This document shows, one piece after another, positions 1 to 44,500 of a stretch of DNA of 64,000 nt. Within the stretch, counting starts at the first letter, position 1. Every line of letters begins with the position of its first letter. The notes under the pieces were generated by a model. That model searched no databases and had not been told where the DNA came from. It worked only from the letters and a program-made list of their open reading frames with translations. A program made the translations under genes and the position numbers. The stretch covers positions 180,234,001 to 180,298,000 of the forward strand of contig CM075978.1 of NCBI GenBank assembly GCA_038087875.1. The letters are read 5' to 3'. The DNA is from Malacoraja senta (Eukaryota).

Positions 1-445
1 CCAGTCTAGAATAGCCTGCTCTCTCGTTGGTTCCTCTACATGTTGGTTTAGATAACTATCCCTCATACATTCCAAGAAATCCTCTTCCTCAGCACCCCTG
101 CCAATTTGATTCACCCAATCTATATGTAGATTGAAGTCACCCATTATAACTGTTTTGCCTTTGTTGCACGCATTTCTAATTTCCTGTTTGATGCCATCCC
201 CAACTTCACTACTACTGCTAGGTGGCCTGTACACAACACCCACCAGCGTTTTCTGCCCCTTAGTGTTTCGCAGCTCTACCCATACCGATTCCACATCCTC
301 CAAGCTAATGTCCTTCCTTTCCACTGCGTTAATCTCCTCTCTAACCAGCAACGCTACCCCACCTCCTTTTCTTTTCTCTCTATCCCTCCTGAATATTGAA
401 TATCCCTGGATGTTCAGCTCCCAGCCCTGGATGTTCAGCTCCCAG
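1..445 (-). mobile_element. CR1-type LINE ORF2 endonuclease fragment
   Basis: Minus strand reads GYSIFRRDREKRKGGGVALLV...VGVVYRPP...IMGDFNLHIDW (APE domain). Confidence 0.85.
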
Positions 446-795
446 CTAGATGCAGGAAGATTGCTCCCGATGTTGGGGAAGTCCAGGACAAGGGGTCACA
501 GCTTAAGGATAAGGGGGAAATCCTTTAAAACCGAGATGAGAAGAACTTTTTTCACACAGAGAGTGGTGAATCTCTGGAACTCTCTGCCACAGAGGGTAGT
601 CGAGGCCAGTTCATTGGCTATATTTAAGAGGGTTAGATGTGGCCCTTGTGGCTAAAGGGATCAGAGGGTATGGAGAGAAGGCAGGTACGGGATACTGAGT
701 TGGATGATCAGCCATGATCATATTGAATGGCGGTGCAGGCTCGAAGGGCTGAATGGCCTACTCCTGCACCTAATTTCTATGTTTCTATGTTTCTA
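446..795 (+). mobile_element. CR1-type LINE 3' end, nested in the opposite orientation
   Basis: KSRTRGHSLRI...FFTQRVVNLWNSLP and a (TTTCTATG)n tail. Confidence 0.88.
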
Positions 796-1900
796 TGTTT
801 CTATAACCACCCTGGAGGTCCTGCTTTTTAGCATTTTTCCGAGTTCTCTAAAGTCACGCTTCAGAATATCCATCCCCTTCTTTCCGACATCGTATGTGCC
901 AACATGCACTACCACTTCTGGCTGTTCACGTTCGCCCCTAAGGATTTTCTGCACTCTGTCCATGACATTCTGGATCCTGGCACCAGGGAGGCAGCACACC
1001 ATTCTCAAATCCCGTCTGTTGCCACAGAAACCCCTGTCTGTACTTCTCACAATGGAGTCTCAAACTACCATGGCGTTGCCTGACGTCGGCCTCTTTGGTT
1101 TTGGCTCAACAGCTCTTTTTGCTTCGGAAGCCAGTGCGCCGCTTAGTGCGTTAATGTCTTCTGTCTCGACAGCTTCTGAGTGGGTGAACCTGTTCACTAG
1201 AGGTACAACACCCGGGGACCTGTGCTCTCCATGTTTAATTCCCTTTCTCACCTTCACCCATCTTCTCTCTTCCAATAACTTAGGTGTAACAATCTTGCTG
1301 TAGGACTCGTCGAGGAACGACTCAGTTTCTCAGACGAACTTGAGGTCATCCACTTGCTTCTCCAGTTCCCCAACATGGTCCTTCAGGAGCTGTACTTGGA
1401 TGCACTTCTCACATTTGTAGCAGCCAGAGGCACCAGCGGTGTCCTTGACCTCCCACATACTGCAAGCATCACACTGAATCAGCTTGCTTGACATCTCCTT
1501 CTTTCATCTCACCCTCTCCAGCGTTTGGTGTGGCGTCCTCCCTCAGCCTCCTCGCCGAAGACTCTCGAGCAAAAGACTCACACCTCCCTCACAAGGCCGC
1601 TCCCTCAGAGCAGCCTTGCTTATATTGACTGATAAATTGCCTAATTCACCAATTAACAATCCAAATTCCTCAGTTTTAAACTGTACCCCCCCTGAGACTT
1701 ACTCGCCTTTCCCACGGGCTTCAGCCAATCAGCTCTTCTCCCTGCCTCTCTTTGTTGCTGCATGTCCAAGATCCACGTAAGCTCTGGGCTAACTCTGGCT
1801 GCTTTTTGGCACTCTTTTTAAATGGTTTCCCCCCTCTGACTCACCTCTGACTCACCTTTCCCACGGGCTTCAGCCAATCAGCTCTTCTCTCTGCCTTTGC
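796..1900 (-). mobile_element. CR1-type LINE ORF1 (Cys-rich region + esterase-like domain) and 5' region, disrupted
   Basis: From the ATG at 1494: MSSKLIQCDACSMWEV...CEKC...; further on VCCLPGARI...QPEVVVHVGTYD; internal stops. Confidence 0.75.
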
Positions 1901-3314: not shown

Positions 3315-6300
3315 ATGCCGGTGAAAGCAATGGTTCGGTACATGGGTCTTCTTGCTTTGGTTTGTCAAGGTATGCTTAGTTTCTGTACCGATTTCGCTAA
3401 TCAAATCATATTTGTCAATATTTTACACTAGTATGCCACAGCAAATTAAATTTACAACGTTTCTGCAATTGCCTTACCACTATTTTCTAATTGTTTTGTA
3501 TTTGTGTATCCATTGGCTCTTTTTCTTGGTGCTGTATGTGCAACTGTTTTCGTCATATTTACTTATTTCTGCCACTGACAAAAGCAACTTCGAGCAAAGT
3601 GGAACAATTCCCCGCAATCCTGAAAGTCTCCAGAGGCAGAAATGAGTCCATGTTCTGCAAATTTCCAATATTAAAAGAAACCGCTGACGTTTCTTGGTGG
3701 AGAGGGGGCGAGAAGACATTTATGGAACCGGACAACAGAAAGCAATTCAAAGTAGACAAGGGAAGCAGTACGTTTACTTTGCTGAATGTGAGTGTCGCAG
3801 ACTTGGGGATGTATTACTGTCGAGTGAAAGATCAACTGCAACTTATCGGCAATGGAACTGGCTCCCAGCTAATTGTGTTAAGTAAGTTTCTTTGTTACGG
3901 GATATGTTCATCTGTTGCAATGTAACTAAAGCTTGCTTGTGGAGAAAATATTAATCTTATCTAGTTCTATAATTTGAATGGTTACTTCCGAGGTGAAAAT
4001 CTGAAATAAAGGGAACATACTGAAAAATATTCCATCCGTCGGTCAATATACGTGCAGCGAGAGTTCTGTTATAGTTTTGTTTTATTTACTCCGGGTTATC
4101 TTACAAAGTCATAGTGACGTTACCCTGGTTATTGCTCTTGTAAATTGGCAGGTCAATTTATATTTTGACCTCCAGCTTTTCAAATACCCAACCAAATTCA
4201 CGTTGCTCCGAATTTCCAGAAAGTTGCTAATTTCCCACCCGACAAACTTTCCCATCAACTAAAATCGGAGGAGAAATGGATCTCACAGTTTTGAGGTGGA
4301 TAATTTGGTTTACACTTTCACACTCTCCAGGAAAGTTCATGGAATGAAAAAAGAAAAAGAAGAACTACAACTGAAATTCTCCGATATTATTTCTTATTTA
4401 AAATAGATCCATGGTTATATCATCGTATAGAATAGAGCTTTGCTTGGTAATAATTTATATGGCACAAGGGAGTAAAAGGTGATATCGCTTTATTAATTAA
4501 TAATGATCGTACAATAAGATGTTATTACATCAATGAAAGAAAGTAAAAATGCTTAAAAACAAACGACATTAAGGAGATTACGCAATGAATTGACAAAAAA
4601 ATGTACAATTAACTCTCCCGCTCGCTAAATATTACTGACAGTGGCTCCAGCACAAATGGAACCATGTTCATTAATGTCTTGTTAATAAAATATATGAAAT
4701 GAGAAACAGAGTTTGCTCGGTTCATCCTTGCGTGTTTTTCGAGTAAATCGATTGTTGTCGCCGTTCTGCCATTCAGTGCAGTCCATTTTCTGTAACTACC
4801 ATATGCACATAAGAAAGAGCAAATGTTCAGAAGAAATGCGTGATTTTGAATTCAACATAAAGCACTGTCACGGAATCTTACCAAGCAATACATGTGTCAC
4901 ATTCCTTCATAATAATCGCGCGTACCCCGCGAGGCAGCAGTACTAAAGTTCACTCCATTCATGCTTTGTTTCAATTGCACTACTTATCTTGAATTCCTCC
5001 GTAAAATAATTTATAACAAAATTATAAACTCAACAAACAACCACACGAATAACAGGAGGCAACAGCAACTACTCAGCGACAATTATGTTAATTGAAATAA
5101 AATATATTTTATAGTTTCACGCTTTTTATATTGTTCCAGCTCCCCCAACTCCATTGAAAATTGTTGCTATTGAAGGAAGTGCACCGCATTTGCCGCAACT
5201 CGTGTGCAAAACGGCTGCGTTTTATCCAGAGAAATTAGAAGTTATCTGGCAAAGAAACAACGTGGAAATTTTGACCGGTATTGAAACCGTGAGAAACAGA
5301 ACAGCGGATGGATTTTATGAGGCTTCCAGTTTTTTGCACGATACGCAGCCTGCTCCAGGCAAAACTGTTTACACCTGCCTGGTATCACACATATCTCTTA
5401 CAGTCCCTGCCAGTTTCAGCTACATTGTCGAGCAAGGTAAGCCGGGAGGCATTTAACGCATACTCCAGCCGCCGAGAAATACAATCTGAACAAGGGTCTC
5501 GATCCGAAATGTCTCCCATTCCTCTCTCCAGAGATGTTGCCTGTCCCGCTGAGTTACTCCAGCTCTTTTGTGTCTATTTTCTAATACAATTAGATAGTTG
5601 TGCAAATACAAACATCCAGATCCTTTTCATATTTACTGGAACCTGCGGTGGCGGGTCCAGGGTGTCAGATCCAGAATATAGAATGCATTCTGACTTTTTA
5701 AACTGTTGTCAAACTACCGGGCGTAGTTTTGTAAAATGAAAATGAACAGTCATCTTAACTTAACCTCTGCAAAGAGCCACCGTATAATGTGATCTGTTCT
5801 ATAAATTCGTCATTACCGTACAGTGCGTGCCATGTGGCAGTCATAAAATCTTTGTGCAGAAAATATTGAACGATTGCTCTGCCTTCTTGTCTCCCGGTCC
5901 CTGTGTGTGTATTTATGTTTCACTGTTCTAATTTTTCGCCATATCCAGAAACCCCAGAAACCACGGACAAAACTCTAATTCTCGGATGTGTCGTGGGCGG
6001 ACTGTCATTTGTAGTTCTGCTTATAATTTTGACAAGATTCGCATTAAAGGCACAACGAGGTAAGAACCTTGTATAATTTTCCATTTCATACACCCGATAG
6101 AAAAGCGGTTGGTGCATTCTGAGAAGTATTGAAACAAGAATCTAGCTATTAGTTGTAAGTTAAACTACAATTATTTCCCCTGCCCTTTCGAATTATTCAA
6201 TCATCCATCGATTGTGTGTTTTTCAAACATCTATATTATTAGCGTGTTGATTTGCTTTAACGTCAAAATTTGAAGTATGAGTTATTTGGTGTAGACCTTC

Positions 6301-8583
6301 GCTTCCTCGGGTTGTGCAGATCTAACGCGGATTGTATATATGAAGGTAATGCACAACACATTACATTGTGGCGATGGTACTCCGATACGTATACGGGATT
6401 GTCGCTGCCTTCAAGGGTCCATAGGCAGTAGATGTGATTATAATCTAATACTGAACTTACATTTTCCTGACATTCAAATGTTATTCGAGATTTCTTTTTT
6501 TTCATGTAGGTATTAATGCAAACTCCGTGGAAGCAAGTCATAGCGTGGAACCGGTAGGTGAAGCTATTCTTCTTGTTTCCAAGAGGAATGGACGAGTACA
6601 GAAATTATACGATCAGCAGAGAATATATCAGTTTCATTCCATATAATTTTAGAACATTGCAGCGCAGAAGGAAACCATTTTGCTTGTCACCTCTAATATT
6701 GGAAGGGGCGCAGCGAGTAAACCTGCAGTCTCATAGTTCTGTCCTGATCAGGTTCAATCCTAATCTCCAACGGTACTGTGGGTGATTTGCATCTTATTCT
6801 TGTGTGGTTTTCGGCCGGATGCTCTACTCCCCTTATACCCCAAAGTAATGCGGATTGCTCGGTTACTTCGCTACTATAAATTGCGACCTAAGAATGAAAG
6901 TACATGAAAGTGCATAAGGGCAGACGATAAACTCGTCCCACTACCAGGTGCTCAAATAGGCCAGGTTGCCTGCGAGATACGGTGGGCACTGGGATCGCTG
7001 CATGAAATATATAGGGATGCCGGAAACGGCGACAACGGAGACTGAATAAGATGGCGGGAAGTGAGAAATTGATCGCATTTGGAGGAGATATTCTTCAAAT
7101 GAATCGCAAGCTACAATATTAATAAACAAGTTGAACACGGGCACTTTGAATCCTCTCGGGAAAGACATTCTGAGAAATATAATTGAATGCAGTTCAAATG
7201 GTATCGTGCCCTTTTTTGCAATTATTCTGTATGTTTATGTTTCAGACTCACTCTTTAAAACTACATCAGACACTCTGCTAACTGTGTTGAATATCACTTT
7301 CTAATAGGCTCGGCAAGCGTCAAGTGGAGATGCCTCTGCCTACGCAACACTAAACTTGAGTGAGGGCAAAAAAATTACCAAATATCGACGAAAGGAAGAG
7401 CATGTTGTCTATGCCGAGGTAAGGGCAAAGTATTTGCACGAAAATAATTCCAAGTAAATACCAGATGAAAGGAAATTATTTCCGTTGATTATGAAGTAAC
7501 CTTGTACGACTGTGGAAAAGCCGAAATGGCGAATTTCCAATTGTGACGTTGAAACCAAATAGAGCCGAACAACACATTCAGCTGCACGACGTCATCCCAA
7601 TGCAAAATTACCTTTATCTCTGTTCCCGGGTTTAATGTAGAATGCTGTCCAAAATTAATGGGAAATTAAGAAACAGACAAGGTAAGGAACAGCCAACCGG
7701 CTTTTCCACCCAACGGGCATATCCAGCGCCACGAAATATGAGAAATTCAGACAATGACAGGAGGAACAGATTGAAATTTGAATTCAGGAAATCCACCTTA
7801 ATAAGGGACAGGTGGCAGGAGGGCACTGGACCTCAGAGAGGTTTATTATATTATTTATAGAGTACTATGTTTACTTATTCTGTTGTGCTGCTGCAAGTAA
7901 GAATTTCAGAGTTCTATCTGGGACATATGACAAGCACTGTTGACAGTGTTTCCCTATTATCTAACAAAGATCACACAGTGAGAGAGATATTATGGCTTCT
8001 CCTCGTATATCCAGCCACAAGGTAAAACAAATTCTGGCCTTATGTGCTGTCATTTTGAACGTTATTTATTACATCCTCGCGGGTTTCCCGAGGTGCTCCG
8101 AATGTTTCGCACATCCCGAATCACGTGAGGGGTTGTAGACTAATTAGACATTTAAAATGTCCCGTGTTTAGGCAAGTGGTATAATCTAGGAGTGAGCGAA
8201 GTGTTGATGGCAATGTGGAGAGAATAAAATTGAATATTTTTCATGAATATTTGTGTTACACTGTTCGCTAGACCAAGAAAGGCTCCGCGGAAGACTGGAT
8301 AAATCATATGCACATAAACTCTTATACCTTATCTGCAATCTGGAAATGATAATTGTTGGTTATATTCCAATCGTATTGAAAAATCGATTGCTTTCCTAAG
8401 TCACTGTACAATGGGTTAACAGGCAATATTGAATATATTTCACAGACCAAACGAGGCGGAGATGACAAACTGACTTACGCCTCCCTGCAGCTTTCCAACT
8501 CCAAGGAAACATCGCTATCTAAGCACAATGACAAATACTCAGTGTACGCGGGTGTAAAGGTTTCAAGGAAAGCGAGAAGTTGA
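3315..8583 (+). CDS. Gene A: SIRP-like IgSF inhibitory receptor (leader-VJ-C1-TM-4 Tyr tail), ~371 aa, 8 predicted exons
   Basis: Exons 3315-3369 (MPVKAMVRYMGLLALVCQG), 3585-3881 (V), 5140-5436 (C1), 5949-6059 (TM), 6510-6553, 7308-7429, 7970-8021, 8446-8583. All introns are GT-AG, phases are compatible, and the 1116 nt total is open to TGA at 8581. Tail motifs: SAYATL, VVYAEV, LTYASL, SVYAGV. The donor at 7430 (AA|GTATTT) is weak, so the exon 6-7 join is the least certain part. Confidence 0.8.
3585..3881 (+). CDS. Gene A IgV exon with J-like end
   Basis: ATSSKVEQFPAILKVSRGRNESMFC...SWW...TLLNVSVADLGMYYCRVKDQLQLIGNGTGSQLIVL. B-strand Cys, C-strand Trp, DxGxYYC, GxGT/S motif; 297 nt, phase 1-1, AAG acceptor, A|GTAAGT donor. 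Confidence 0.93.
5140..5436 (+). CDS. Gene A Ig C1-set exon
   Basis: PPTPLKIV...LVCKTAAFYPEKLEVIWQRN...DGFYEASSFL...YTCLVSHISL. C1 hallmarks (CxxxxFYP, W, YxCxVxH); 297 nt, phase 1-1, TTCCAG acceptor, G|GTAAGC donor. Confidence 0.92.
5949..6059 (+). CDS. Gene A transmembrane exon (uncharged core)
   Basis: ETPETTDKTLILGCVVGGLSFVVLLIILTRFALKAQR; 111 nt, phase 1-1, G|GTAAGA donor. Confidence 0.85.
7308..7429 (+). CDS. Gene A cytoplasmic exon with two tyrosine motifs
   Basis: ARQASSGDASAYATLNLSEGKKITKYRRKEEHVVYAEVRAK after a CTAATAG acceptor. Phase 0 is supplied by the 44-nt exon 6510-6553 (GINANSVEASHSVEP). Alternative donor at 7419. Confidence 0.75.
8446..8583 (+). CDS. Gene A terminal cytoplasmic exon with two ITIM-like motifs
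   Basis: TTTCACAG acceptor, then TKRGGDDKLTYASLQLSNSKETSLSKHNDKYSVYAGVKVSRKARS*. AATAAA motifs near 8787 and 8832. Confidence 0.85.
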   Translation, partial: TKRGGDDKLTYASLQLSNSKETSLSKHNDKYSVYAGVKVSRKARS

Positions 8584-10027: not shown

Positions 10028-11618
10028 TAAGGAGGTTGCACGGCAGTCGAGGTCACGACCCGTGACCCGTACTGTTGCCACGCAACGCATTCTGGAGTAC
10101 ACGCGGTGAACGTCAGGTAGGCACTTACTATGGCTGCCAATACAGCGGGCCCATATTCTGTTCCAGTATCCGGACTCCACGCTGACTGGTTTCACACTCG
10201 CGGACCCCCCGGGCCGTCCATCCCCGCGGCCGGGTGTGGGGGGAGGAGGTCGTGGTGCAGGTGCCGGTGCAGTGTGGTCAGTGACTCTGGGTGGGTGGAG
10301 GGACCAGACTGTCCCCAGCTCCGCTGCAGCTGACGGGGACGTTGCCGGGTGTTGGGGAGGGGGAGGTGGGGTGCGGGTAGTCGGGGTGGGGGTTGGGGTG
10401 TGGACGCGGGGGGCTGGGGATGGTCGGGGGCTTGGGGGGCGTGGGGGATGGTCGGGGCGGTCGGGGCGGTCGGTGGGGGGGGTCGGTGGGATGGGGGTCG
10501 GGGTGCCGGTGGGGGGGGGGTCGGGGTGCCGGTGCCGGTGCAGCGCGGTCAGTGATTCTGGGTGGGCGGAAGGACCAGACTGTCCCCAGCTCCGCTGCAG
10601 CTGACGGGGACGTTGCCGGGTGTTGGGGAGGGGGGGTGGGGTGCGGGTAGTCGGGTGGGGGTTGGGGTGTGGACGCGGGGGGCTGGGGATGGTCGGGGGC
10701 TTGGGGGGCGTGGGAGATGGTCGGGGCGGTCGGTGGGGGGGGGTCGGTGGGATGGGGGTCGGGGTGCCGGTGGGGGGGGGGGGTCGGGGTGCCGGTGCCG
10801 GTGCAGCGCGGTCAGTGATTCTGGGTGGGCGGAAGGACCAGACTGTCCCCAACTCTGTTGCAGCTGACGGGGCCGTTGCCGGGTGGTCGGGGGTGGGGTG
10901 TGGGGGGTGGTCGGGGGGAGGGGGTTGTTGGTCGGGGTGCCGGGGGGGGGGGGTCGGGGTGCCGGTGCCGGTGCATCTCGGTCAGTGTCTCCGGGTGGAC
11001 GGAAGCACTAGACTGTCCCCAACTCTGCTGCAGCTGACGGGGACGTTGCCGGGTGGGCGGGGGTGATCGGGGGTGGTCGGGGGGTGTGGGCGGTGGTCGG
11101 GGGGTCGGTGGGGGGTGGTGGTGGTGGTCGGGGGTGGGTGGTCGGGGGTGGACGGAAGCACCAGACTGTCCCCAACTCTGCTGCAGCTGACGGGGAAGTT
11201 GCCGGGTATTTGCCCCCATGTGTCCGTGCACGGAGCCCCGGTCACGCTCCACCGGGCCTCGTGTGTGGGCGTTGCCGACCCACAACCCGGGAGGGTGGGC
11301 GGAGGGCGGCCGTGGCCGGATAGCGCTCACCCCAGGCGGAGAGTAGGCGCTGTCCCGAGGGATGCGCTCCTTCGGCCACTTACATCTTGGTGCTCGGATT
11401 CAGAGCAAAGATACTAGAGCATTTGGATCAGAGTGCTCAGTCACCCTCCACGATTATTTACAGCGCAAAAATGGACCATTTCGGCGGTTTTTAACAGGTA
11501 AGAAAGTATTCGTTTCGTGTGTTAACAGTGTATGCAGGAGGCTGCCATGTCCTCCAGAAGGGTTGAGGTGCTACGCGCGTCACGCCCTTTGATCCGATGA
11601 TCTTATGCAACCCCCCTA
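10028..11618. mobile_element. Putative non-autonomous DNA transposon with an internal GC-rich minisatellite
   Basis: Imperfect 13-bp TIR (TAAGGAGGTTGCA / TGCAACCCCCCTA, 11/13 match). TSD not identified. Confidence 0.45.
10267..11205. repeat. GC-rich tandem array: ~83-bp core x4 plus a partial copy, with G-run spacers
   Basis: Core GTGCAGCGCGGTCAGTG...CCAGACTGTCCCCA.CTC.GCTGCAGCTGACGGGGACGTTGCCGGG at ~10267, 10538, 10801, 10971 and partially at 11149. Confidence 0.9.
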
Positions 11619-19315: not shown

Positions 19316-19478
19316 GCATCTAAGGGAACATATCTCCTCCAGCGTACTCACGGAAGCATAAATACTGTGTACTCGAAATGCATCATGCTCCCCTAGTCAT
19401 GTGATACACCGTGTCGGATACACATACTTCAGGCATCCTATAATATCCTATTTCTTACGCAAAGCACTCATTTGCAGT

Positions 19479-22400
19479 ATGTCGGTGCAAGCAATCGTTC
19501 GGTACATAGGTCTTCTTGCTTTGCTTTGTCAAGGTATGCTTAGTTTATGTCCGATTTTGCAGAGCAAATCTTATTTTATAATATTTTACACTAGTTTGCC
19601 ACAGCAAATTAAATTTACAACGTTTCTCCAATTCCTTTACCATTGTTTCCTAATTGTTTCGTATTTTTGTATCTGTTGGCTCTTTATCTTGATGCTGTAT
19701 GTGCAACTGCTTTCATCGTATTTACTTGTTTTCTGCCACCCGCAAAAGCAACTTCGAGCAAAGTGGAACAATTCCCCGCAATCTTGAAAGTCTCCAGAGG
19801 CAGAAATGAGTCCATGTTCTGCAAATTTCCAATATTAAAAGAAACCGCTGACGTTTCTTGGTGGAGAGGGGGCGAGAAGACATTTATGGAACCGGACAAC
19901 AGAAAGCAATTCAAAGTAGACAAGGGAAGCAGTACGTTTACTTTGCTGAATGTGAGTGTCGCAGACTTGGGGATGTATTACTGTCGAGTGAAAGATCAAC
20001 TGCAACTTATCGGCAATGGAACTGGATCCCAGCTAATTGTGTTAAGTAAGTTTATTTGTTACGGGATATGTTCATCTGTTGCAGTGTCTTTGTTCCGGGA
20101 GGCGGGATATTTTTTATCTGTTGCAGTGTAACTAAAGATTGCTGGTGGGGAAAATATAAATCTTAGATCACTAGATTATGAACTGCATTAACTAGTTCCT
20201 TCCATAATTTTAATAGTTACTTGCGAGGTGGGATTTCGAAAGTAAGGGAACATGCTGAAAATATTCCACCCGTCGGTCGATATCCGCGAATGATTCTGTT
20301 ATTGTTTCGTTTTACTACGAATTTTCTTACCAATTCACATTGACATGGCCCCGGAGATTGCTCCTGTAAATTTGCAGGTCAAATTATAAACCCAACGAAA
20401 TATATGTTACTCCGAATTTCCAGAAATCTCCGTAACTACCACATGCATCTAAGAAAGAGCAAACGCTCAGAGAAATGTCTGGTTTTGAATTTTTTTTTTA
20501 AAGCTCTACTACAGGACCTTACCACGCAGTGAACCTGTCGCATCCCTTCAGAATAGTCTCGCGATTCCCACGTGGTAACAGCACGAAAGTTTCACTTTTG
20601 TGATTTGCCTCAATTATATTTGTCATCTTTATATCCACCGTAAAATAATTTATAACAAAATTATACAGTAAACAAACGACCACGCGGATAACAAGAGGTA
20701 GTGGCAACTATTCAGCGACAAATGTTCATTGTAATTAAATAAATCTTGCAATTTCACACTCATGTTTATTGTTGCAGCTCCCCCAACTCCACTGAAAATT
20801 GTTCTTTTTGAAGGAAGTGCGCCGCATTTCCCGAAACTCGTGTGTAAAACGGCGGCGTTTTATCCGGAGAAATTAGAAGTCACCTGGCAAAGAAATAACA
20901 TTGAAATTTTGACTGGTATAGAAACCGTGAGAAACAGGACTGCGGAGGGATTTTATGAGGCTTCGAGTTTTTTGCAAGATGCGCTGTCTGCTCCAGGCAA
21001 AACTATTTACACCTGCCTGGTATCACACGAATCCCTTACAGTCCCTGCAGGTTTCAGCTACGTTGTCGAGCAAGGTAAGACAGGAGGCATTTAACACACA
21101 CTGCACGGGGAATACGGTTAGATAATTGTTGAAACACTAAGGGGGGAAATCTGAATTGTATTTATACGCAGTGAAAGATTGAGTTGCTAGCTACCTATAG
21201 TTATGTAAATATCGTTTGCTCTCTCACCACTGCAAAGATAATCTTTGGAAATATATACTGACTGTCATAACTAAAGCAGTCACAAAACATTTCACAAGAA
21301 TTAAGATGTAAGATAAATCGCTAAGCTGCTCAGGGAGATGTCAGGTCAGATCACCAGTTGTGAAAAAAAGAAGCAGCGGTGAATTTCGTGGGCGAAGCTT
21401 GGCGCATCATCGTGGTAGAACAGGGAAATTCAGCCGGAGAGTGTATGAAATAAATGAACTTTTACGTACATTTTGAACTTTGGGCTAAAGTACCGGGCGC
21501 TGTGTTGTAAAAATAAATAAAATCCTTTTATCTTAATAAGCAAACCTCTTCACAATCTGCCACCGTGTGTGTGATTTGTTCCTTCAATAAATTCCAATAT
21601 TACCTTACAATTCATGGACAATGGAGGACCAGGCGTGGGGAGACCGCCGTGGAGAGGGGGAAGGGAGGAGGACAAATGGGGACCTGGCGCGGGGGTAACT
21701 TTGTAACTTTGTAAGCGCCCTTGGGTATGCAAGCAAATAATTTCACTGTGACGTGTCACATGTGACGACGAAGTATTGAATCTGTATTGAATATTTTATG
21801 CAGGGAGGGTGGATAGATACCTTAAAATGCTCTGCTTTCTTGTCTCCCTATTCCTGAATATGTGTTCCTATGGTTCACAGTATCTTATGTTTCGCCAGAT
21901 CCAGAAACCACGAACAAAACACAAATTCTTGGATGTGTAGTGGGCGGACTGTTAATTGTGATTCTGATTATATTTTTCACAAGATTCGGATTAAAGACGC
22001 AACAGGGTAAGAACGTTGCATATTTTTACCAAGTACTGCAATTTATCAGTTCTGTTCATTGATCAGAGACAGGGTACATTCTATTGCAGCGCGAAACACG
22101 ATTTCAAAGTCATTTACTGCTTGAAAATTGATAATAGCGGTCTTTCTTTCAAGAGAGAGCTAGATAGGGCTCTTCAAGAGAGAGCTAGATAGGGCTCTTA
22201 AAGATAGCGGAGTTGGGGGATATGGGGAGAAGGCAGGAACGGGGTACTGATTGTGGATGATCAGCCGTGGTCACATTGAATGGCGGTGCTGGCTCGAAGG
22301 GCCGAATGGCCTACTCCTGCACCTATTGTCTATTGTCAGTCAAACACGGAATCTGAACAGAAAATTATTTCATCTGCCCCACACCACCCTGACATCACAT

Positions 22401-24257
22401 ATAACCCTTAAAGGTTCCTTCCAGTTTCAACTATTTGGTCAAACAAGGACATGCAGGAAGCATTTTAAACGAGTTCTACATCAGATTAGAAATACAGCTG
22501 TGTAGTTGTTCAAACACGAGAGAGAGAAGTATGAATTGTATTATTTGTAGTGAAAGGCCAACGTGCAAGCTACTCAAAAACTAATACCTCATTCAATGCA
22601 TCCCGACTGAGATGAATTAACAACTTGAATTTATGTGCGGCTTATTTCATTGTAAACAATCGTGAGTATATGGGACTACGCGGCCAGATTCAGCTCAATT
22701 TCCATCTACAAATTTGCAGATGACACCACGGGTGTGGGCCGGATCGCAAACAATGGCATGTGCGTGTGTCCTTAGTTCTCGAATTCACTCTTAACCCCCT
22801 CTTTGACATTACCCATTGCTAAAATACTTCCTTGCATCTTCACCGTATCTGCACGCACGTCCTATTATGTGGATCGATGACAAATTATACTGTGTATAAT
22901 GCTTCTGCTTTTTTTTAAACTGATGTCTATTGCCTAGTGTAACAATATGAAATAAATAAATCTCTTCTTAACCTAAATCAATTATCCCCTATAGAAAGAG
23001 CTACTCTGTAACGTGACGCGTTTGCTTGATATTTAAAATTTCTATGTTTCTATGTTTCTAACCCATAATTGTTGCAATATGTATTTCCTACAATATTTTT
23101 TGGTAGGTTGGAGCGTCACTTTTCAATGCTCTGCCATTAGCTTCTACTCCCTGTATAATTAATGTCTCACGGTTTCTTATTTTTCACCTAATCCAGAAAG
23201 TACTTATAAAAGACTGATTCTCACACGTGCAGTGGGTGGATTGGTAATTTTGCTTTCGATTATAATTTTGACCAGATTAGCATGGACGGCACAACATGGT
23301 AAGCACCTTGGATTGTTCCGTTATTTCAATCCTATTTCTAGAAAAGAGAAAATATGCGTTTTTATTCGGAATTAAACAGAACGTCCATAGCATTTATCTA
23401 TTTGACAGTTGGCTATACCAGTGTAAATTGCGCCTTAAAATGCAATGATTTCACCATTCCATTCGAAGTATTCACTCCTGTCCTGAACCAATCCTTTGTG
23501 AACACCTGAGTTTATTCACCGAAATGTGTCCCTCGTGACAAAACGAGAGGAAACTGAGCGTCCGAGAGCAAAGTAACCAATTTCAATCTGTCCAAAAGGC
23601 CATGCCGGCTAATTGCAACAATCTGTGATCCGACTGACAAATGGAGGTGTATCAGTAAATTCAGAATGGGAATTTACACCGTGGGCTTGACAGATGAAAC
23701 TGGTTGCCAGCGATCAAACACAAATACATCAAAACGGCTCTGTGCAATATTAATACCACACATGGATAGTATCGTATGTGTTTAAGAATTTAACTAATCT
23801 CTCAATCTGGCCTTCAATGTCGCCTGTTTGACGTTTGTTCCTTCTCCTTATGACCCCGTGGATTTATTCCGGGTGTTCCTGTTTTCTAGCACATCCCAAA
23901 GATATGTGGAATGGTGGGTTAATTATCCCCTGTAAAATGCTCATCTGTTAGAGGACTTCTAAAATTTGGGGGCGGGGGAGAGGTTAATGACAATATGAAG
24001 CGAATAAAGTAGAATTTGGGTTAATGGGAGTTTGACGGTCGGCGCAGACTTGGATCCGCGTAATTACGACATAGTTCTGTGGACCATGATCGGCTCATGT
24101 GAAAATCGAGAAAAATATTGATATAAAATCCATATAACCTTTCTGCAAACTAAAATTGTTGAGTACCTTAGAATGTTATTGGAAAGAAAAACTATTGCTT
24201 TCCCGAGTCACTGAACGATGGACTAATGGCCGATATGAAATTACTTTCACAGACTAA
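19479..24257 (+). CDS. Gene B: paralogous leader-VJ-C1-TM receptor, predicted short-tailed activating type (~251 aa with TM2)
   Basis: Exons 19479-19533 (MSVQAIVRYIGLLALLCQG), 19749-20045 (V), 20778-21074 (C1), TM1 21899-22006 and/or TM2 23197-23298, terminal exon from 24253 (G+AC TAA). All open and GT-AG. The terminal exon choice is inferred. Confidence 0.72.
19749..20045 (+). CDS. Gene B IgV exon (protein-identical to gene A)
   Basis: Same translation as 3585-3881; only CTG>TTG and GGC>GGA differ. Confidence 0.93.
20778..21074 (+). CDS. Gene B Ig C1-set exon
   Basis: PPTPLKIVLFEGSAPHFPKLVCKTAAFYPEKLEVTWQRN...YTCLVSHESL; 297 nt, phase 1-1. Confidence 0.92.
21899..22006 (+). CDS. Gene B TM exon 1 (neutral, gene A-like)
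   Basis: DPETTNKTQILGCVVGGLLIVILIIFFTRFGLKTQQ; CGCCAG acceptor, G|GTAAGA donor, 108 nt. Confidence 0.78.
22140..22338 (+). mobile_element. CR1-type LINE 3' end between the two TM exons
   Basis: GAAGGGCCGAATGGCCTACTCCTGCACCTATTGTCTATTGTC tail; internal duplication of TCTTCAAGAGAGAGCTAGATAGGGC. Confidence 0.8.
23197..23298 (+). CDS. Gene B TM exon 2 (Arg-containing)
   Basis: ESTYKRLILTRAVGGLVILLSIIILTRLAWTAQH; ATCCAG acceptor, G|GTAAGC donor, 102 nt, phase 1-1. Not in the supplied ORF track. Confidence 0.75.
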
Positions 24258-24365
24258 AGGAGGGGGAGCCAACAAGCTGCTCCGCAGCTTCCCAACTACA
24301 ATAAAAAATCAGCAACTAAGCAAAACGGCAAACACGCAAAGGTTTCAAAGAAAGCGAGAAGTTGA
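24253..24365 (+). pseudogene. Decayed homologue of the gene A terminal ITIM exon
   Basis: Same TTTCACAG|AC(C/T)AAA start and AAAGGTTTCAA..AAAGCGAGAAGTTGA end as 8446-8583, but 25 nt shorter with both ITIM Tyr codons lost. Confidence 0.8.
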
Positions 24366-24869: not shown

Positions 24870-26772
24870 CATAAGAAACATAGAAACATAGAAAATAGGT
24901 ACAGGAGGAGGCCATTCGGCCCTTCGAGCCAGCACCGCCATTCATTGCGATCATGGCTGATCGTCCCCAATCAATAACCCGTGCCTGTCTTCTCCCCATA
25001 TCCCTTGATTCCACTAGCCACTAGAGGTCTATCTATCCAGCGATTTGGCCTCCACTGCCCTCTGTGGTAGGGAATTCCACAAATTCACAACTCTCTGGGT
25101 GAAAACGTTTTTTTCTCACCTCAGTCTTAAATGGCCTCCCCTTTATTCTAAGACTGTGGCCCCTGGTTCTGGACTCGCCCAACATTGGGAACATGTTTCC
25201 TGCATCTAGCTTGTCCAGTCCTTTTATAATTTTATATGTTTCTATAAGAATCCCCCCCCCCCTCATCCTTCCAAACTCAAGTGAATACCTCTTTTCAATC
25301 TTTCCTCATATGACGGGTTCGAAGTATTGTTCCTTTGTATCCATTTGATACTGTCGACCACACCATCCTAATTGACCGTCTCCGGTATGGGGTTGGTATT
25401 GATGGCACTGCCCTGAGCTGGTTCATCTCCTACCTCAAAGGTAGGAGTTTCTCGACTAACATAGGCAACTCTTTCTCCTCCCCAGCTAATCTCTGCTGTG
25501 GGGTTCCACAACGTTCCATCCATGGCCCCATTCTCTTCTCCCTGTATATGCTCCCCTTAGGCCAAGTCATTGAAAGGCACGGCATTTCCTTCCATTGCTA
25601 TGCAGACGATACACAACTCTATCTCCCCCTGAAGCCCAACAACCAATCAAATCTGTTTAACCTTACCCACTGTCTCGAGGATATAAAGTGTTGGATGGCC
25701 CAGAACTTCCTCCAACTAAACGAGAGTAAGTCTGAGGTCATCCTTCTCGGCCCCTCGGACTCAATCAAAATGATAGCAGGCAGCCTTGGAAGCCTTACCC
25801 CACTACTCAAACCTCACGTCAAAAACCTTGGTGTGATATTTGACTCAGCACTGAAATTTGACAAACAAGTCAATGCCGTGGTAAAAGCTAGCTTCTTTCA
25901 GCTTCGGACGATAGCTAAAATAAAACAATTCCTCCAGTTTGATGACCTCGAAAAGATCATCCACACATTCATCTCCTCCCGCCTAGATTACTGCAACTCC
26001 CTTTACACTGGCATCAGCCAATCTTCCCTGTCCCGCCTGCAACTGGTCCAAAACGCCGCAGCGAGACTCCTGACGGGCACCCGAAAAAGGGACCACATCA
26101 CCCCGATCCTGGCCTCTCTCCACTGTCTCCCTGTGCGGTTCCGTATAAACTTCAAGATCCTCCTCCATGTCTACAAAGCCCTCAATGGGCTTGCCCCCAT
26201 CTACATAAAAAGTCTTCTCACCCACCACTCCACCTCCAGGCCCCTCAGATCGGCCGACTTGGGGTTGCTGAAAATCCCACGGTCTAGGCATAAGCTCAGG
26301 GGCGACCGCGCCTTTGCGGTTGCAGCCCCTAGACTGTGGAACAGCATCCCCTTTCCCTTCAGAACTGCCCCCTCCATCGACTCTTTTAAGTCAAAACTAA
26401 AGACTTACCTATACTCCCAATCCTTTCCTGACGTCCTCTGAGTGAGGGCTACATGTATATATGTATGTAGTTTGTTTTGTTTGTGCTATTCTTATAACAA
26501 ATGTAAAGCACTTTGGCCAACGAGAGTTGTTTTTTAAATGTGCTATATAAATAAATGTGACTTGACCTGACTTGACTTGACTTGACAGTCCCGCCATCTC
26601 AGGGATCAATCTCCCTACGCTGCGCAGCCTCACTCACAAGGATGTCCTTCCTCAAATTAGGAGACCAAAACTGTACGCAATACTCCAGATGTGGTCTTAC
26701 CAGAGCCCTATACAACTGCAGAAGAACCTCTCTACTCCTATACTGAAATCCTCTTGTTATGAAGGCCAACAT
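24870..26772 (-). mobile_element. CR1-type LINE 3' fragment split by an L2 insertion
   Basis: CR1 text ...TCCTCATATGAC (25314) resumes as AGTCCCGCCATC (26587). Confidence 0.8.
25344..26586 (+). mobile_element. L2-clade LINE, 5'-truncated, open RT/C-terminal ORF
   Basis: FDTVDHTILIDRL...GVPQ...YADDTQLY...ISSRLDYCNSL...APRLWNSIP*, stop at 26441; (GACTT)n tail. Confidence 0.9.
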
Positions 26773-38280: not shown

Positions 38281-38286
38281 GGTTTA

Positions 38287-40715
38287 TAGACAATAGGTGC
38301 AGGAGTAGGCCATTCGGCCTTTCGAGTCTGCACCGCCATTCAATGTGATCATGGCTGATCATCCACAATCAGTACCCCGTTCCTGCTTTCTCCCCATACC
38401 AATCACTCCGCTGTCTTTAAGAGCTCTATGTTGAAAGCATCCAGAGAACCGGCCTCCACCACCTTCTGAGGCAGCGAATTCCACAGACCCACAACTCTCT
38501 GTGTGAAAAAGTTTTTCTTCATCTCCGTTCTAAATGGCTTAACCCTTATTCTTGAACTGTGACCCCTGGTTCTGGACTCCCCCAACAGCGGGAACATGTT
38601 TCCTGCTTCTAGCGTGTCCAAATGCTGAATAATCATATATGTGTCAATAAGACCCACTCTCATCCTTTTAAATTCCAGAGTATACAAGCTCAGACGCTCC
38701 ATTCTATCAACATATGATAATCCCGCCATCCCGGGAGTTAACCTGGTGAACCTACGCTGCACTCCCTCAACAGCAAGAATGTCCTTCTTCAAATTTGGAG
38801 ACCAAAACTGCAATCAATACTCCAGGTGTGGTCTCACTAGGGCCCTGTACAACTGCAGAAGGACCTCTTTGTTCCTATACACTCCTCTTGTTATGAAGGC
38901 CATTCGCTTTCTTCACTGCCTGCTGTACCTGCATGCTTACTTTCAGTGAATGATGTACAAGGACCCCCAGATCCCATTGTACTTCCCCTTTTCCCAACTT
39001 GACACCATTGAGATAATAATCTGCCTTCCTGTTTTTGCCACCAAAGTGGATAACCTCACATTTATCCACATTAAACTGCATCTACCATGCATCTGCCCAC
39101 TCACCCAACCTGTCCAAGTCACCTTGCATCCTCATAGCATCCTCTTCATAGTTCACACTGCCACCCAGCTTTGTGTCATCTGCAAATTTGCTAATGTTAA
39201 TTTTAATCCCATCATCAAAATCATTAATGTATATTGTAAATAGCTGCGGTCCCAGCACCGAGCCTTGCAGTACCCCTACCAGTAGTCACTGCCTACCATT
39301 CTGTAATGGACCCGTTAATCCCTACTCTTTGTTTCCTGTCTGCCAACCAATTTTCTATCCATGTCAGCACTCTACCCCCAATACCATGTGCCCTAATTTT
39401 CCCCACTAATCTCCTATGTGGGACCTTATCAAATGCTTTCTGAAAGTCCAGGTACACTATATCCACTGGCTCTCCCTTGTCCATTTTCCCAGTTACATCC
39501 CCAAAACATTCCAGAAGATTAGTCTAGCATGATTTCCCCGTCATAAATCCATGGCCAAAGTTGACTGGAAATCTACTGTTAACCAAATGTGGTGCTATTT
39601 CATCTTTTATAATTGACTCCAGCATCTTCCCCACCACCGATGTCAGGCTAACTGGTCTATAATTCCATGTTTTCTCTCTCCCGCCTTTCTTAAAAAGTGG
39701 GATAACATTAGCTACCCTCCAATCCACAGGAACTGATCCTGAATCCCTAGAACATTGGAAAATAATCACCAATGTGTCCTTGATTTCCAGAGCCACCTCC
39801 TTAAGTACCCTGGGATGCAAACCATCAGGCCCTGGGGATTTATCTGTCTTCAGTCTACCCAACACCATTTCCTGCCTAATGTGCATTTCCTTCAGTTCCT
39901 CTGCCACCCTAGATCCTCTGGCCACTGGTACATCAGGGAGATTGTTTGTGTCCTCCTTAGTGAGGAAGGGTCCAAAGTACCTGTTCAAGTCCTCTGCAAT
40001 TTCCTTGTTCCCCATAATAAATTCACCTTTCTCAGTCTTCAATGGTCCAACTTTGGTCTTAACTTTTTTTTCCTCTTCACATACCTAAATAAGCTTTTAC
40101 TATCCTCCTTTATATTCTTGGCCAGCTTACCTACGTACCTCATCTTTTCTCCCCGTATTGCCTTTTTAGTTAACTTTTGTTGCTCTTTAAACGTTTCCCA
40201 ATCCTCTGTTTCCTGCTCATCTTTGCTATGTTATATTTATTCTCTTTTATTTTTATACTGTCCCTGACTTCCATTGTCAGCCACGGTCGCCCCTTACTCC
40301 CCTTGGAATCTTTCTTCCTCTTTGGAATGAACTGATCCTGCACCTTCTGTATTATTCCCAGAAATACCTGCCATTGTTGTTCCACTGCCATCCCTGCTAG
40401 GGTATCTTTCCAGTCAACTTTGGCCAGCTCCTCCCTCATGGCTTCATAGTCCCCTTTGTTCAACTGTAATACTGACATCTCCGATTTATCCTTCTCCCTC
40501 TCAAATTGTAGATTAAAACTTATCATATTATGGTCACTACCTCCTAATGGCTCCTTTACCTCGAGTTCCCTTATCAAATACGGTTCATTACACAACACTA
40601 AATCCAGAATTGCCTTCTCCATGGTAGGCTCCAGTACAAGCTGCTCTAAGAATCCATCTCGGAGGCACTCCACAAACTCCCTTTCTTGGGGTCCAGTACC
40701 AGCAGCTGCAGCTCC
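38287..40715 (-). mobile_element. CR1-type LINE, ~2.4 kb ORF2 fragment (EN-RT-3' end), disrupted
   Basis: AILDLVLCNEP...NYRPVSLTSVVGKMLESII...VYLDFQKAFDKVPH...QFWSPNLKKDI. Confidence 0.9.
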
Positions 40716-41527: not shown

Positions 41528-44500
41528 ATGTCGTTTGGAGCATCAGTTCGATACATGATTCTTCTGGCTACAGTTTGGCATGGTACTTTTAGATACATGT
41601 GGGGTTTCCGAATCTCATGTCATGTTTTATAATATTCTATTTTTAAAAAGACACAAAGTTCTGGAGTTACTCCGTGGGTCAGGCAGCATCTAAGGAGAAC
41701 GTGGATAGGTGACGTTTCGGGTCGAAACTACTTCAGAATCTAAAGAAGACTCTTGGCCGCTGAGTTACTCCAGCACTCTGTGTCTTTTTTTGTAAACCAG
41801 TCGGTGCAGTTCCTTGTATCTCCTTAGAATATTCTATGTTGGTTACCAAGCACGAAGTTAGTTACAGTGCTTCTTAATACGTTTATGGCCGATTCTAGTT
41901 TATTTTGAATTTTTCAACTCTTTGTTCATTTTGCTTGTCCGGATGGTCAACTGTTTTCCGTATTCTTGCTTAATTTCTGGCAGCCTTCGAAGTAACTTCA
42001 ACCAAAGTGGACCAATTCCCGAAAGACCTGACCGTCCACAGAGGAGACAATGTTTCCATGTTCTGCACATTCTCAATACAACAAGTTACTCCTGATGTTT
42101 ACTGGTGGAGATGGGGCGAGAAGACATTTATAGAACCAGACAGCAGAAAACAAATTTCTACCAAAAAGGGCAGTGCGGATTTCGTTCTCCTGAATGCGAA
42201 TGTCGCGGACTCCGGGGTTTATTATTGTAAAGTGAAACATCAGCAGCAATCTATCGGAGATGGACCTGGCTCAAGGCTCACTGTGTTCGGTAAGTGCCCT
42301 GTAAGGGAGAACTTTTAATCTTCCCGGGGAACAAGTAAAGCTCGCTGATATTAATAACATGACATTTTATAACTCGGCAAAAACTCGATAAGATTTATAT
42401 TATAAAAGCAAACCGTTCCAAATCTGATATATTTAAATAATCCGTAAGTGGGTCAGCATCTGTGTAGAGACAAAATGTCATTTTCCTCATTTCGTACTTC
42501 TCCAGAGAATTTCCCATTGTTCTCCTGTAGATTCGCGCTGTCCACTTTCGCGTTATTGCCCACGATCCAGATTCACCCTTTATTACCCCCCATGGTGTGC
42601 TTGAATGTATTAAATCAAATGACTTAGATTAAACTTTTTTTCGAATTGTTTTTCATGCAAAATTGAAAATGTTGAAGCCACGTGGATGTTTTAATCTTAA
42701 TTGTGATAGGAATGTCCCATTTCTGCTCCCGAAGACAACGGAATAACACCTCCATCCTGGATAGGTTGTTTAAAACAATATTCAAACGCCACCACTCTAC
42801 GCCAATAGTGGGTACAATCTCACAAGAATAGTGTTTACAGTCCATATTGATTCACACATAATTTTCGCTTTTTACGCGCCACCTTACAAATTATCTCCGA
42901 AATCTGTAACTTTATTCACTTAAAGTCTGGAAACAAGAAAATAAATTGATCTCTCGAAATTGGGATGTTAGAATATTCATTTGGGTTAGGTATCGTGGGG
43001 TATGTGACAACAGGGTTTGTGACACAGAGACCTGACGCACAAACCACCCACGATTGAATTGAACAACGGAGCGGCCTCGGCCTTAAATATTCTACTCTTT
43101 TATTCGTCTGCTGTAAACGAAGCTGAACCCCGTATCAAACCACCATGGTTATTATACAGATGAATCCTATAAACCGTTGAGAGGTTTGATTTGCTGGATT
43201 CTTACTCCAGGGACAGAATATCACCGTCTCACTCCGAGGATTCTCATTTAAACACTTAACCTTTGTAAAATACGTGTAAGATTTAACGGCATTTGGGGCA
43301 AACGCCAGGGCACCTGTCCTTACAATTATATTTAATACATGACTCAACCCTCAATCTCTCCACGTTTCCTCCCAATTATTCATTCTACCTAAATAGATCT
43401 GTGTTCGTGCCACAGATTAATTCTACGGGCCCTTTTTTACTCGTGGACATTTTTCATCATGCTAGAAAAACGCCCCGACCTACTTGATGGCACGACCTTC
43501 TATGGCCTCCATACGACCTCCTACGACATGTCTACGACTTACCTACGACCTCGTGCCGGCCATGCTGCGAGTATGAGTCAAGGGCAAACTCGGCAGAGGT
43601 CGTGAATTAGGTCGTGAAAGTGGGACAGGGGCACTCGCCGAGGCTGAGAATAAGCATGGAGGTCTCCTCCGAGTTCAATAAAGAAACTGATTCAACAACC
43701 TGTTACTAAAGAAACGGAATGTAAAAAGATTTAAAACTAAGATGATAAACTCGTAAAGTTGTCATCAACTCGCAGAGAGATTTAACAATAGGCCTCCTAC
43801 TAGCTAGATTGTAGATCCGATTGTAGATTGCGTTCGCAATTGACCCACTCTGAGCTGATATAAGTGAAATCTTATTCAGACCAAACGTCTTCAGCAAACC
43901 GAGTACATTTGGAAAATGGCAAAATTGTAGAAGAGACGTAGTCTAAGTTTGGATTTCCCATTCGCGTATTGTACTTATTGAAGAAGCGTCTAATATTTGC
44001 ACGGCGATACTAATTATCAGTAGATAGACACAAAAAGCTGGAGTAACTCAGTGGGACAGGCAGCATCTCTGGAGAATGAATGGGTGACGTTTCGGGTCGA
44101 GACCCTTCTTCAGACATCTGCAGTTCCTTCTTAATAATTATTAGTGTAACTATCATGCCTTCAAATTGCGCAGTTAGCGTTGTGGAGAAACGTCCCGGGC
44201 CAAAAGCTGTATCACTTGAGCCCTCCATCCCAGGTACTAAACAATTGTGTGGACCAAGCTCTCTTCTATGCAACTACGGCCTGCCTCGTGATAATTGATA
44301 TTGGTGATATCTGGATATATACCGCGCTACATTGGTTAGCGCTGCCCACAACTTCAGCGACCCAAGTTCGACCCAGATCATGCGTGCGTCCATATAATAG
44401 TTCTCCCCTTCAACGCGTAGACGTTCCTCCGGTGCTCCGGTTTATTCCGCGTGCCACTGATCTGCAGGTTGGTAGGAAAACTAGCCTCTGTAAATTGTCC

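What the first reader, a model, noticed from the sequence alone, without database searches (positions are those of the whole stretch)
19749..20045. Gene conversion confined to the V exon between genes A and B
Hand counts: V exons differ at 2/297 nt (both synonymous), leader exons at 5/55, and C1 exons at 32/297 (15 amino acid changes, 14 synonymous codon changes). The intron just upstream of V is visibly more diverged. A 7-fold drop in synonymous differences is not explained by protein-level purifying selection alone. The near-identical tract starts at about the splice acceptor and ends about 45 nt into the next intron, the pattern known for paired Siglecs.
Basis: partly seen in the sequence, partly recalled or inferred. 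Interest (0 to 1): 0.8.

Follow-up and report, generated by a model that had tools for sequence, protein, structure and literature searches.

The report
Skate receptor twins share copied tip
Two neighbouring immune-receptor genes of a skate have drifted apart everywhere except in the piece coding the outer, binding tip, which was recently copied from one gene to the other; this is known from mammal and frog receptor pairs, and I found no report of it in sharks or rays.

Summary

Gene A lies at 3.3-8.6 kb and has an ITIM (inhibitory tyrosine motif) tail. Gene B lies at 19.5-24.4 kb.

- **Counts:** the V exons differ at 2/297 nt, both synonymous. The leader differs at 5/55, the C1 exon at 32/297, intron 1 by 13.6% and intron 2 by 19-25%.
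- **Synonymous divergence (dS):** 0.03 in V against 0.25 in C1 and 0.26 in TM (Fisher p=0.002). The 241-nt identical run exceeds all 20,000 permutations.
- **Not slow evolution:** every other paralogue pair has V no more similar than C1. A control pair under purifying selection keeps V dS at 0.22. Contigs from three other species, presumably skates, differ from this V by about 4-9%, at least as much as the flanking introns do.
- **Not an assembly artefact:** independent short-read contigs of the same species join both intron-1 types to one V sequence exactly at 19743.
- **History:** a pseudogene copy of A and the different shared-tract limits in the other species point to repeated conversions.
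- **Function:** A carries four tail tyrosine motifs. B has lost them and has a spare Arg-containing transmembrane exon, so the pair looks like an inhibitory/activating pair. No RNA data were available to test this.

This is a new member of a known kind.

The parts
19743..20073 (+). Near-identical (conversion) tract in gene B. It covers the V exon, 6 nt of intron 1 and 28 nt of intron 2. The perfect core is 19785-20025.
   Evidence: 3 differences in 331 nt against the gene A copy, background 18%. In own-species contigs both intron-1 types merge here.
3579..3909 (+). The matching tract in gene A (V exon 3585-3881 plus flanks).
   Evidence: Alignment A1 and the three-way alignment.
19749..20045 (+). 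Gene B V exon (297 nt, phase 1-1). It has a germline-joined J-like end, IGNGTGSQLIVL.
   Evidence: Read from the sequence. Pfam I-set/V-set. AG/GT splice sites.
19479..19533 (+). Gene B leader exon.
   Evidence: ATG, hydrophobic leader and GT donor. 5/55 differences from gene A.
20778..21074 (+). Gene B C1 exon, not converted.
   Evidence: Pfam C1-set, E=3e-9. 32/297 differences, dS 0.249.
21899..22006 (+). Gene B transmembrane exon 1, uncharged (LGCVVGG...).
23197..23298 (+). Gene B second transmembrane-type exon, with Arg in the helix (LILTRAVGG...). It is in frame, phase 1-1, with AG and GT present.
   Evidence: The Arg sits at the same position as in gene C's transmembrane exon. Whether this exon is used is not shown.
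24253..24365 (+). Gene B counterpart of the last (ITIM) exon. Both tyrosine motifs are lost by deletions. Joined to a phase-1 transmembrane exon it reads Asp-stop.
   Evidence: and my reading of those sequences.
3315..3369 (+). Gene A leader exon.
5140..5436 (+). Gene A C1 exon.
5949..6059 (+). Gene A transmembrane exon, uncharged. The acceptor is at 5947/5948 or 5956/5957.
7308..7418 (+). Gene A cytoplasmic exon with SAYATL and VVYAE(T). It has no counterpart in gene B.
8446..8583 (+). Gene A last exon with LTYASL and SVYAGV, then the stop codon.
   Evidence: The same tail occurs in Narcine, Mobula and Heterodontus proteins.

Best explanation
Genes A (3.3-8.6 kb) and B (19.5-24.4 kb) are old tandem duplicates, with dS about 0.25. 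They lie on the same strand, 16 kb apart, in an eight-member cluster of leader-V(J)-C1-TM receptor genes that I found only in cartilaginous fish.

**Main claim.** Their V exon was made the same by non-reciprocal copying between the two loci (interlocus gene conversion during recombinational repair). This happened recently: after the split from three other species (presumably related skates), and probably after A itself was duplicated to give the pseudogene psiA. The tract is about 280-330 bp and in this genome fits the V exon almost exactly.

**More than one event (inferred).** The 3' two thirds of the exon are identical in A, B and psiA. In the first 68 nt, A matches B and psiA stands apart. 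In three other species the stretch shared by the two gene types has different limits.

**Likely reason the conversions are kept (inferred from motifs only).**
- A is an inhibitory receptor with four tail tyrosine motifs.
- B has lost those motifs and carries an Arg-containing transmembrane exon, like activating or decoy partners.
- Selection would then favour keeping the same binding tip on both.
For: - **Counts and tests:**
- **V against C1 identity:** 99.3% against 89.1% for A-B, while every unconverted pair has V no more similar than C1.
- **Trees:** the A-B path length is 0.007 in V against 0.124 in C1.
- **Control pair C/D:** introns 20-31% diverged, V dS 0.217, dN 0.022.
- **Site patterns with psiA:** Fisher p=7e-8. 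Six sites with A=B and psiA different fall in 19743-19810 (P=2.5e-4 against the psiA background rate; clustering p=0.003).
- **Own-species contigs (X1):** both intron-1 types end at 19772, which is 19742 plus k-1, and a contig runs from 19743 through V into B's own intron 2 and C1.
- **Other species, divergence:** V differs by about 4-9% from the reference. States shared by A and B here (19899, 19969, 19994) differ from every contig laid at those sites in X2 and X5; 19969 and 19994 also differ in X6.
- **Other species, tract limits:** the shared stretch runs from about 19497 to 19869 at double depth in X5. In X6 it runs from between 19634 and 19662 to about 19961. In X2 the two intron-1 types merge at about 19749 and then split into two versions between 19781 and 19848.
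- **Motifs:**
Against: - No long read links each V exon to its own flanks. The short-read contigs collapse the shared part, and the own-species contig shows gene A's letters at 19784 and 20026.
- The cross-species evidence comes from tables of de Bruijn contigs, of which only 40 of 339 variant rows were shown. It cannot separate alleles from paralogues, and the species are coded.
- The direction and number of events rest on few sites. Polarising them with the other paralogues failed because these are about 30% diverged.
- No RNA run was found, so neither the use of the Arg exon nor the short tail of B is shown.
- The exon joining A's transmembrane exon (which ends in phase 1) to the phase-0 exon at 7308 was not found.
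Confidence: 0.88

Rival explanations
1. No conversion occurred. The V exon simply evolves very slowly, under constraint on the protein plus constraint on synonymous sites such as splicing signals.
For: Both differences in V are synonymous and dN is 0, so purifying selection does act on V. The tract limits lie close to the splice sites.
Against: - C/D keeps V dS at 0.217 despite a dN of 0.022.
- V is as diverged as C1 or more so in all other pairs.
- V differs by about 4-9% between species, at least as much as the introns do.
- 28 intron bases are also near-identical.
- Site patterns with psiA are incongruent between the tract and its flanks.
Confidence: 0.03
2. Assembly or polishing artefact: reads of one copy overwrote the other copy's V exon.
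For: Three near-identical V exons lie within 45 kb, which is a classic place for collapse. The own-species contig carries A's letters at the two sites that distinguish B.
Against: - Contigs built straight from short reads show both intron-1 types joining the same V sequence exactly where the assembly says (19743). No extra full-depth V variant appears.
- Reads about 10% diverged would not mis-map systematically.
- Other species show shared tracts at the same exon.
- X1 may come from the same individual, so this check is not fully independent.
Confidence: 0.03
3. The conversion is real but neutral: a chance repair event between similar tandem exons. B would be a decaying gene rather than a partner receptor.
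For: B's ITIM exons are lost or decayed and no expression data exist. psiA shows that copies in this cluster do die. Tract limits differ among species.
Against: - B's leader, V, C1 and transmembrane exons are open, with consensus splice sites.
- C1 dN/dS is 0.33.
- The Arg in the second transmembrane exon sits at the same position as in gene C, and a catshark family member has an Arg-bearing helix and a short tail.
- Shared tracts in three further species all overlap the V exon.
Confidence: 0.2

Closest known systems
Xenopus CEACAM paired receptors (ceacam301/303 and 350/351), PMC5112662
   Same: The conversion is limited to the exon of the ligand-binding Ig domain, just including the splice signals. 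Synonymous changes are nearly absent and the flanking introns are diverged. One partner carries ITIM motifs.
   Different: It is a different Ig family: an N domain followed by C2-type domains, with ITAM-like partners. That paper argues the genes must face opposite ways. Here both genes lie on the same strand, 16 kb apart.
Primate Siglec-11/16 and Siglec-5/14, PMC5701461 and PMC4042635
   Same: An inhibitory and an activating partner whose extracellular coding part is kept alike by repeated gene conversion. A pseudogene copy takes part in the history.
   Different: In Siglecs the tract covers the 5' region and several exons. The domains are V-set plus C2-set sialic-acid binders. Here one V exon is involved, followed by a C1-set domain, and the ligand is unknown.
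SIRP alpha/beta family
   Same: V domain with a J-like end, C1-set domain, four-tyrosine inhibitory tail, and partners with a basic residue in the membrane helix. NCBI's automatic names for the shark and ray relatives are mostly 'SIRP alpha-like'.
   Different: There is one C1 domain instead of two. No SIRP chain is among the best 60 solved-structure sequence matches of either domain; the C1 matches are Ig heavy chains, UrIg2, IgNAR and MHC class II beta. Orthology is not shown.
UrIg2 C-domain homogenisation in sharks, PMC12227049
   Same: Gene conversion among Ig-domain exons in cartilaginous fish, seen as clustering within species.
   Different: That case concerns repeated C-domain exons within one gene. 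It does not involve a binding-domain exon shared between an inhibitory gene and its partner.

Membership tests
Paired receptors with a conversion-homogenised ligand-binding exon (Siglec-5/14, Siglec-11/16, CEACAM type) | The binding-domain exon is near-identical while flanking introns and other exons are diverged. | tested here: met
   V 0.7% against introns 13.6-25% and C1 10.8%.
Paired receptors with a conversion-homogenised ligand-binding exon (Siglec-5/14, Siglec-11/16, CEACAM type) | Synonymous differences are lacking relative to other exons and to control pairs. | tested here: met
   dS 0.033 against 0.25. Control pair C/D has V dS 0.217.
Paired receptors with a conversion-homogenised ligand-binding exon (Siglec-5/14, Siglec-11/16, CEACAM type) | The converted exon groups by species while other exons group by paralogue. 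| tested here: inconclusive
   Within the genome the V and C1 trees and site patterns conflict. Across species only contig tables were available: three A/B-shared states differ from every contig laid at those sites in X2 and X5, and two of them also in X6. No orthologue sequences could be fetched.
Paired receptors with a conversion-homogenised ligand-binding exon (Siglec-5/14, Siglec-11/16, CEACAM type) | One partner has a cytoplasmic ITIM tail. | tested here: met
   Gene A has SAYATL, LTYASL and SVYAGV, plus VVYAET. This is motif evidence only.
Paired receptors with a conversion-homogenised ligand-binding exon (Siglec-5/14, Siglec-11/16, CEACAM type) | The other partner has a short tail and a charged transmembrane residue that recruits an ITAM adaptor. 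| tested here: inconclusive
   Gene B has an in-frame Arg-containing transmembrane exon and a decayed ITIM exon. It also keeps an uncharged transmembrane exon. No transcripts were available.
Paired receptors with a conversion-homogenised ligand-binding exon (Siglec-5/14, Siglec-11/16, CEACAM type) | Both partners are expressed in the same cells and bind the same ligand. | not testable with these tools
   No RNA run was found. The ligand is unknown.
SIRP family | N-terminal V domain with a J-like G-x-G motif. | tested here: met
   IGNGTGSQLIVL lies at the exon end. Pfam I-set/V-set.
SIRP family | Two membrane-proximal C1-set domains. | tested here: not met
   A single C1 exon lies between V and TM in A, B, C and D and in the shark and ray proteins.
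SIRP family | Specific sequence relatedness to SIRP proteins. | tested here: not met
   No SIRP chain is among the best 60 solved-structure sequence matches of V or C1. The 'SIRP alpha-like' names are automatic.
Siglec family | V-set domain followed by C2-set domains. | tested here: not met
   The second domain is C1-set (E=3e-9). C2-set models score only E=0.006-0.03.

The most novel reading that the evidence does not exclude
Skates carry a true inhibitory/activating receptor pair whose binding exon has been re-matched by independent gene conversions in several species. That would make this the evolutionarily oldest known case of paired-receptor co-evolution. It would sit in a non-rearranging V(J)-C1 family built like an antigen-receptor chain, and would place the decoy-type arms race at the base of jawed vertebrates.
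Probability: 0.4. Interest if true: 0.65.

Novelty: new member of a known kind. Interest (0 to 1): 0.5.

Why it matters
Exon-limited conversion that keeps the binding domain of an inhibitory receptor and its partner alike is taken as a footprint of pathogen-driven or ligand-driven arms races. It is documented in primates and in frogs.

Finding the same footprint in a skate has three consequences:
- It involves a receptor family that I found only in cartilaginous fish.
- It suggests that this way of evolving is as old as jawed vertebrates.
- It points to a concrete gene pair whose ligand and signalling can be tested.

It also shows that such conversion works between genes on the same strand. 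This goes against a requirement for opposite orientation stated in the frog CEACAM paper (PMC5112662).

Tried and rejected
- **Skate orthologues through protein searches.** The representative search and the word-index searches returned rays, sharks and a chimaera but no skate protein. The V exon alone as a query found nothing. A proper per-exon tree with orthologues could therefore not be built.
- **DNA of a possible second case.** Hypanus sabinus P0169/P0175 have V 86% against C1 69% identity. No DNA was served for them.
- **RNA evidence.** No RNA run was found. Exon use in gene B and the missing linker exon in gene A remain open.
- **Polarising the A=B, psiA-different sites with the other paralogues.** These are about 30% diverged and gave ambiguous states.
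- **C/D as a second V-limited conversion.** Rejected: its V dS of 0.217 matches its introns.
- **Literature.** No paper on this family or on paired-receptor conversion in cartilaginous fish turned up. UrIg is a different gene family.
- **Own-species contig at 19784 and 20026.** The contig carries A's letters there. I read this as the majority path of a collapsed three-copy repeat, not as evidence about gene B.

Full report
**Naming.** Gene A is the gene at about 3.3-8.6 kb. Gene B is the gene at about 19.5-24.4 kb, and its V exon is the stretch named in the finding.

**What is in the window.**
- A self-comparison and a search of the whole genome show eight paralogous genes on the + strand of one chromosome, within about 160 kb.
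- Each has a leader exon, a 297-306-nt V exon ending in a J-like motif, a C1-set exon (Pfam C1-set E=3e-9) and a transmembrane exon.
- Four of them lie in the window: A, B, C (V at 41984-42289) and D (V near 62750-63053).
- About 24 kb before the window lies psiA. It is 95% identical to gene A over 4.4 kb. It has a 1-nt deletion in V, a frameshift in C1 and stops in the tail exons.
- Relatives occur in rays, sharks and a chimaera under inconsistent automatic names: 'SIRP alpha-like', 'NCR3LG1-like', 'TCR beta-like'.

| Region (A against B) | Differences | Note |
|---|---|---|
| V exon | 2/297 | at 19784 and 20026, both synonymous |
| Leader exon | 5/55 | all non-synonymous |
| C1 exon | 32/297 | 15 amino-acid changes, 14.5 synonymous differences |
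| Intron 1 | 13.6% | |
| Intron 2 | 19-25% | plus indels |

- Synonymous divergence (dS) is 0.033 in V, 0.249 in C1 and 0.26 in TM. Fisher's test on synonymous differences gives p=0.0017.
- Near-identity starts at 19743, 6 nt before the acceptor. It runs to 20073, 28 nt into intron 2, where a 42-nt indel begins. That is 3 differences in 331 nt against an 18% background (P=2e-24).
- The perfect core of 241 nt was never approached in 20,000 shuffles, where the maximum was 104.

**Is it just constraint?** No, for four reasons.
1. Among the eight paralogues every unconverted pair has V no more similar than C1: 63-73% against 64-75% nt identity. Even the recent duplicates A/psiA (97.6 against 99.3) and C/D (94.2 against 96.5) follow this. 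Only A-B (99.3 against 89.1) and B-psiA (96.9 against 88.3) reverse it.
2. The C/D pair is a natural control. Its introns are 20-31% diverged and its V exon is under strong purifying selection (dN 0.022), yet V dS is 0.217. Protein-level selection therefore does not erase synonymous differences in this family.
3. In six other chondrichthyan species paralogues mostly have V less similar than C1.
4. Contigs from three other species were laid on 19318-21110. I take them to be related skates, because they hold about a fifth of the stretch's 31-mers. They differ from the reference V by about 4-9%: for example 9-10 differences in 128 nt and 12 in 157 nt in X2. Gene-B-type intron and C1 sequence differs by 4-6%. 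V is therefore fast-evolving between species and almost identical between A and B within this one.
   - At 19899 and 19969, A, B and psiA share a state here. At 19994, A and B do.
   - No contig laid at these three sites in X2 or X5 carries that state.
   - In X6 the same holds for 19969 and 19994.

**Is it an assembly artefact?** This is unlikely.
- In the run that holds 96% of the stretch's words (X1, the same species), a gene-B-type and a gene-A-type intron-1 contig both stop at 19772. That is 30 nt past the last A/B difference, as expected for k=31 when two paths merge.
- A 1794-nt contig then runs from 19743 through V into B's own intron 2 and C1, with only two differences.
- Those two differences are A's letters at 19784 and 20026. 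I read this as the majority path of a repeat present three times.
- No further full-depth V variant of the A/B type appears.
- The run may come from the sequenced individual, so long reads remain the clean test.

**History.**
- With psiA as a third sequence, the sites outside the tract show 285 with A=psiA and B different, against 18 with A=B and psiA different. Inside 19743-20025 the counts are 1 against 7 (Fisher p=7e-8).
- The trees agree. In C1, A and psiA pair with 97/95 support and B sits 0.12 away. In V the three are unresolved, within 0.02.
- The 3' 214 nt of the tract are identical in all three copies, apart from a 1-nt deletion and a substitution three bases on, both in psiA. This part was probably homogenised before A was duplicated.
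- Six sites with A=B and psiA different crowd into the first 68 nt. This gives P=2.5e-4 against psiA's own rate of 1.25%, and clustering p=0.003. It suggests a later event in which A took B's sequence there while psiA kept the old one. This direction is tentative.
- At 19784 the T is peculiar to B here; every contig laid there in all four runs has C.
- At 20026 one other species (X2) has A on its gene-B-type contig and C on another contig. The newest tract may therefore end before 20026.

The stretch shared by the two gene types has other limits in the other species:

| Run | Shared stretch | Note |
|---|---|---|
| X5 | about 19497 to 19869 | double-depth contig of gene-A type |
| X6 | from between 19634 and 19662 to about 19961 | |
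| X2 | merges at about 19749 | two versions again between 19781 and 19848 |

In X5 and X6 the shared intron-1 part carries gene-A-type letters. This points to independent, repeated conversions that always include part of V. The neat fit to the exon in this genome would then not be a mechanical rule. These readings rest on contig tables and depths and are inferences.

**Functional context (sequence motifs only).**
- Gene A has an uncharged membrane helix and two tail exons carrying SAYATL, VVYAE(T), LTYASL and SVYAGV. The same tail occurs in Narcine, Mobula and Heterodontus proteins.
- Gene B lacks the first tail exon. Its last-exon counterpart has lost both motifs through deletions. Joined to a phase-1 transmembrane exon at the CACAG acceptor (24253), it reads Asp-stop.
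- B also has a second, in-frame transmembrane-type exon (23197-23298) with Arg in the helix (LILTRAVGG).
- Gene C has Arg at the same place (LRNVGG) while its near twin D does not. A catshark member has an Arg-bearing helix and a short tail.
- B's C1 has dN/dS of 0.33, so its outer part is under selection.
- This is the layout of inhibitory/activating pairs. Expression, exon choice, adaptor and ligand are all untested, because no RNA run was found.

**Comparison with what is known.**
- The closest precedent is in Xenopus CEACAM pairs. [quoted passage not shown]
They work the same way over longer tracts.
- The proteins here are not Siglecs, because the second domain is C1-set.
- They fail two SIRP criteria: there is one C1 domain rather than two, and no SIRP chain is among the best solved-structure matches.
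- I found no paper on this family or on such pairs in cartilaginous fish.

I therefore class this as a new member of a known kind: a solid, well-supported conversion tract in a new lineage and family.

Noticed in passing
L001:4356-10000 and L002:1-452 (G000:C2:180209356-180215452, about 24 kb before the window): psiA is a recent copy of gene A, 95% identical over 4.4 kb. It has a 1-nt deletion in V, a frameshift in C1 and stops in both tail exons. It served here as the third sequence for the incongruence test.
   Followed up: yes
window 45022-45369 against L011:1276-1623 (gene D, beyond the window end): In the C/D pair the C1 exon has dS 0.09 and the first 57 nt of the following intron differ by 1.8%. 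The intron before C1 differs by 28%. This may be a second conversion tract, this time at C1.
   Followed up: partly
window about 48250-48330 (gene C) against L011 about 5775-5880 (gene D): Gene C's transmembrane exon has Arg in the helix (VVHVLRNVGGTLIILL). Its close twin D has an uncharged helix (LILGCVVGALAILI). This may be a second inhibitory/activating pair in the cluster.
   Followed up: partly
window 20074-20115: A 42-nt insertion in gene B's intron 2 sits right at the 3' end of the tract. It repeats the following ATCTGTTGCAGTGT. Contigs of the other species skip 34-44 nt here, so the spot varies between species.
   Followed up: partly
window 10236-11210: A G+C-rich block (64% G+C, strong G skew) of internally repeated units of about 170-270 bp lies between genes A and B.
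   Followed up: no
window 6060-7307: Gene A's transmembrane exon ends in phase 1, but the ITIM exon at 7308 starts in phase 0. Relatives have a linker of about 17 residues here. The small exon was not found; an alternative acceptor at 7316/7317 would also keep the frame.
   Followed up: partly
window 444-803, 24874-25313, 38286-39065, 50782-51605: Copies of one interspersed repeat, 75-95% alike and on both strands, are scattered through the cluster.
   Followed up: no
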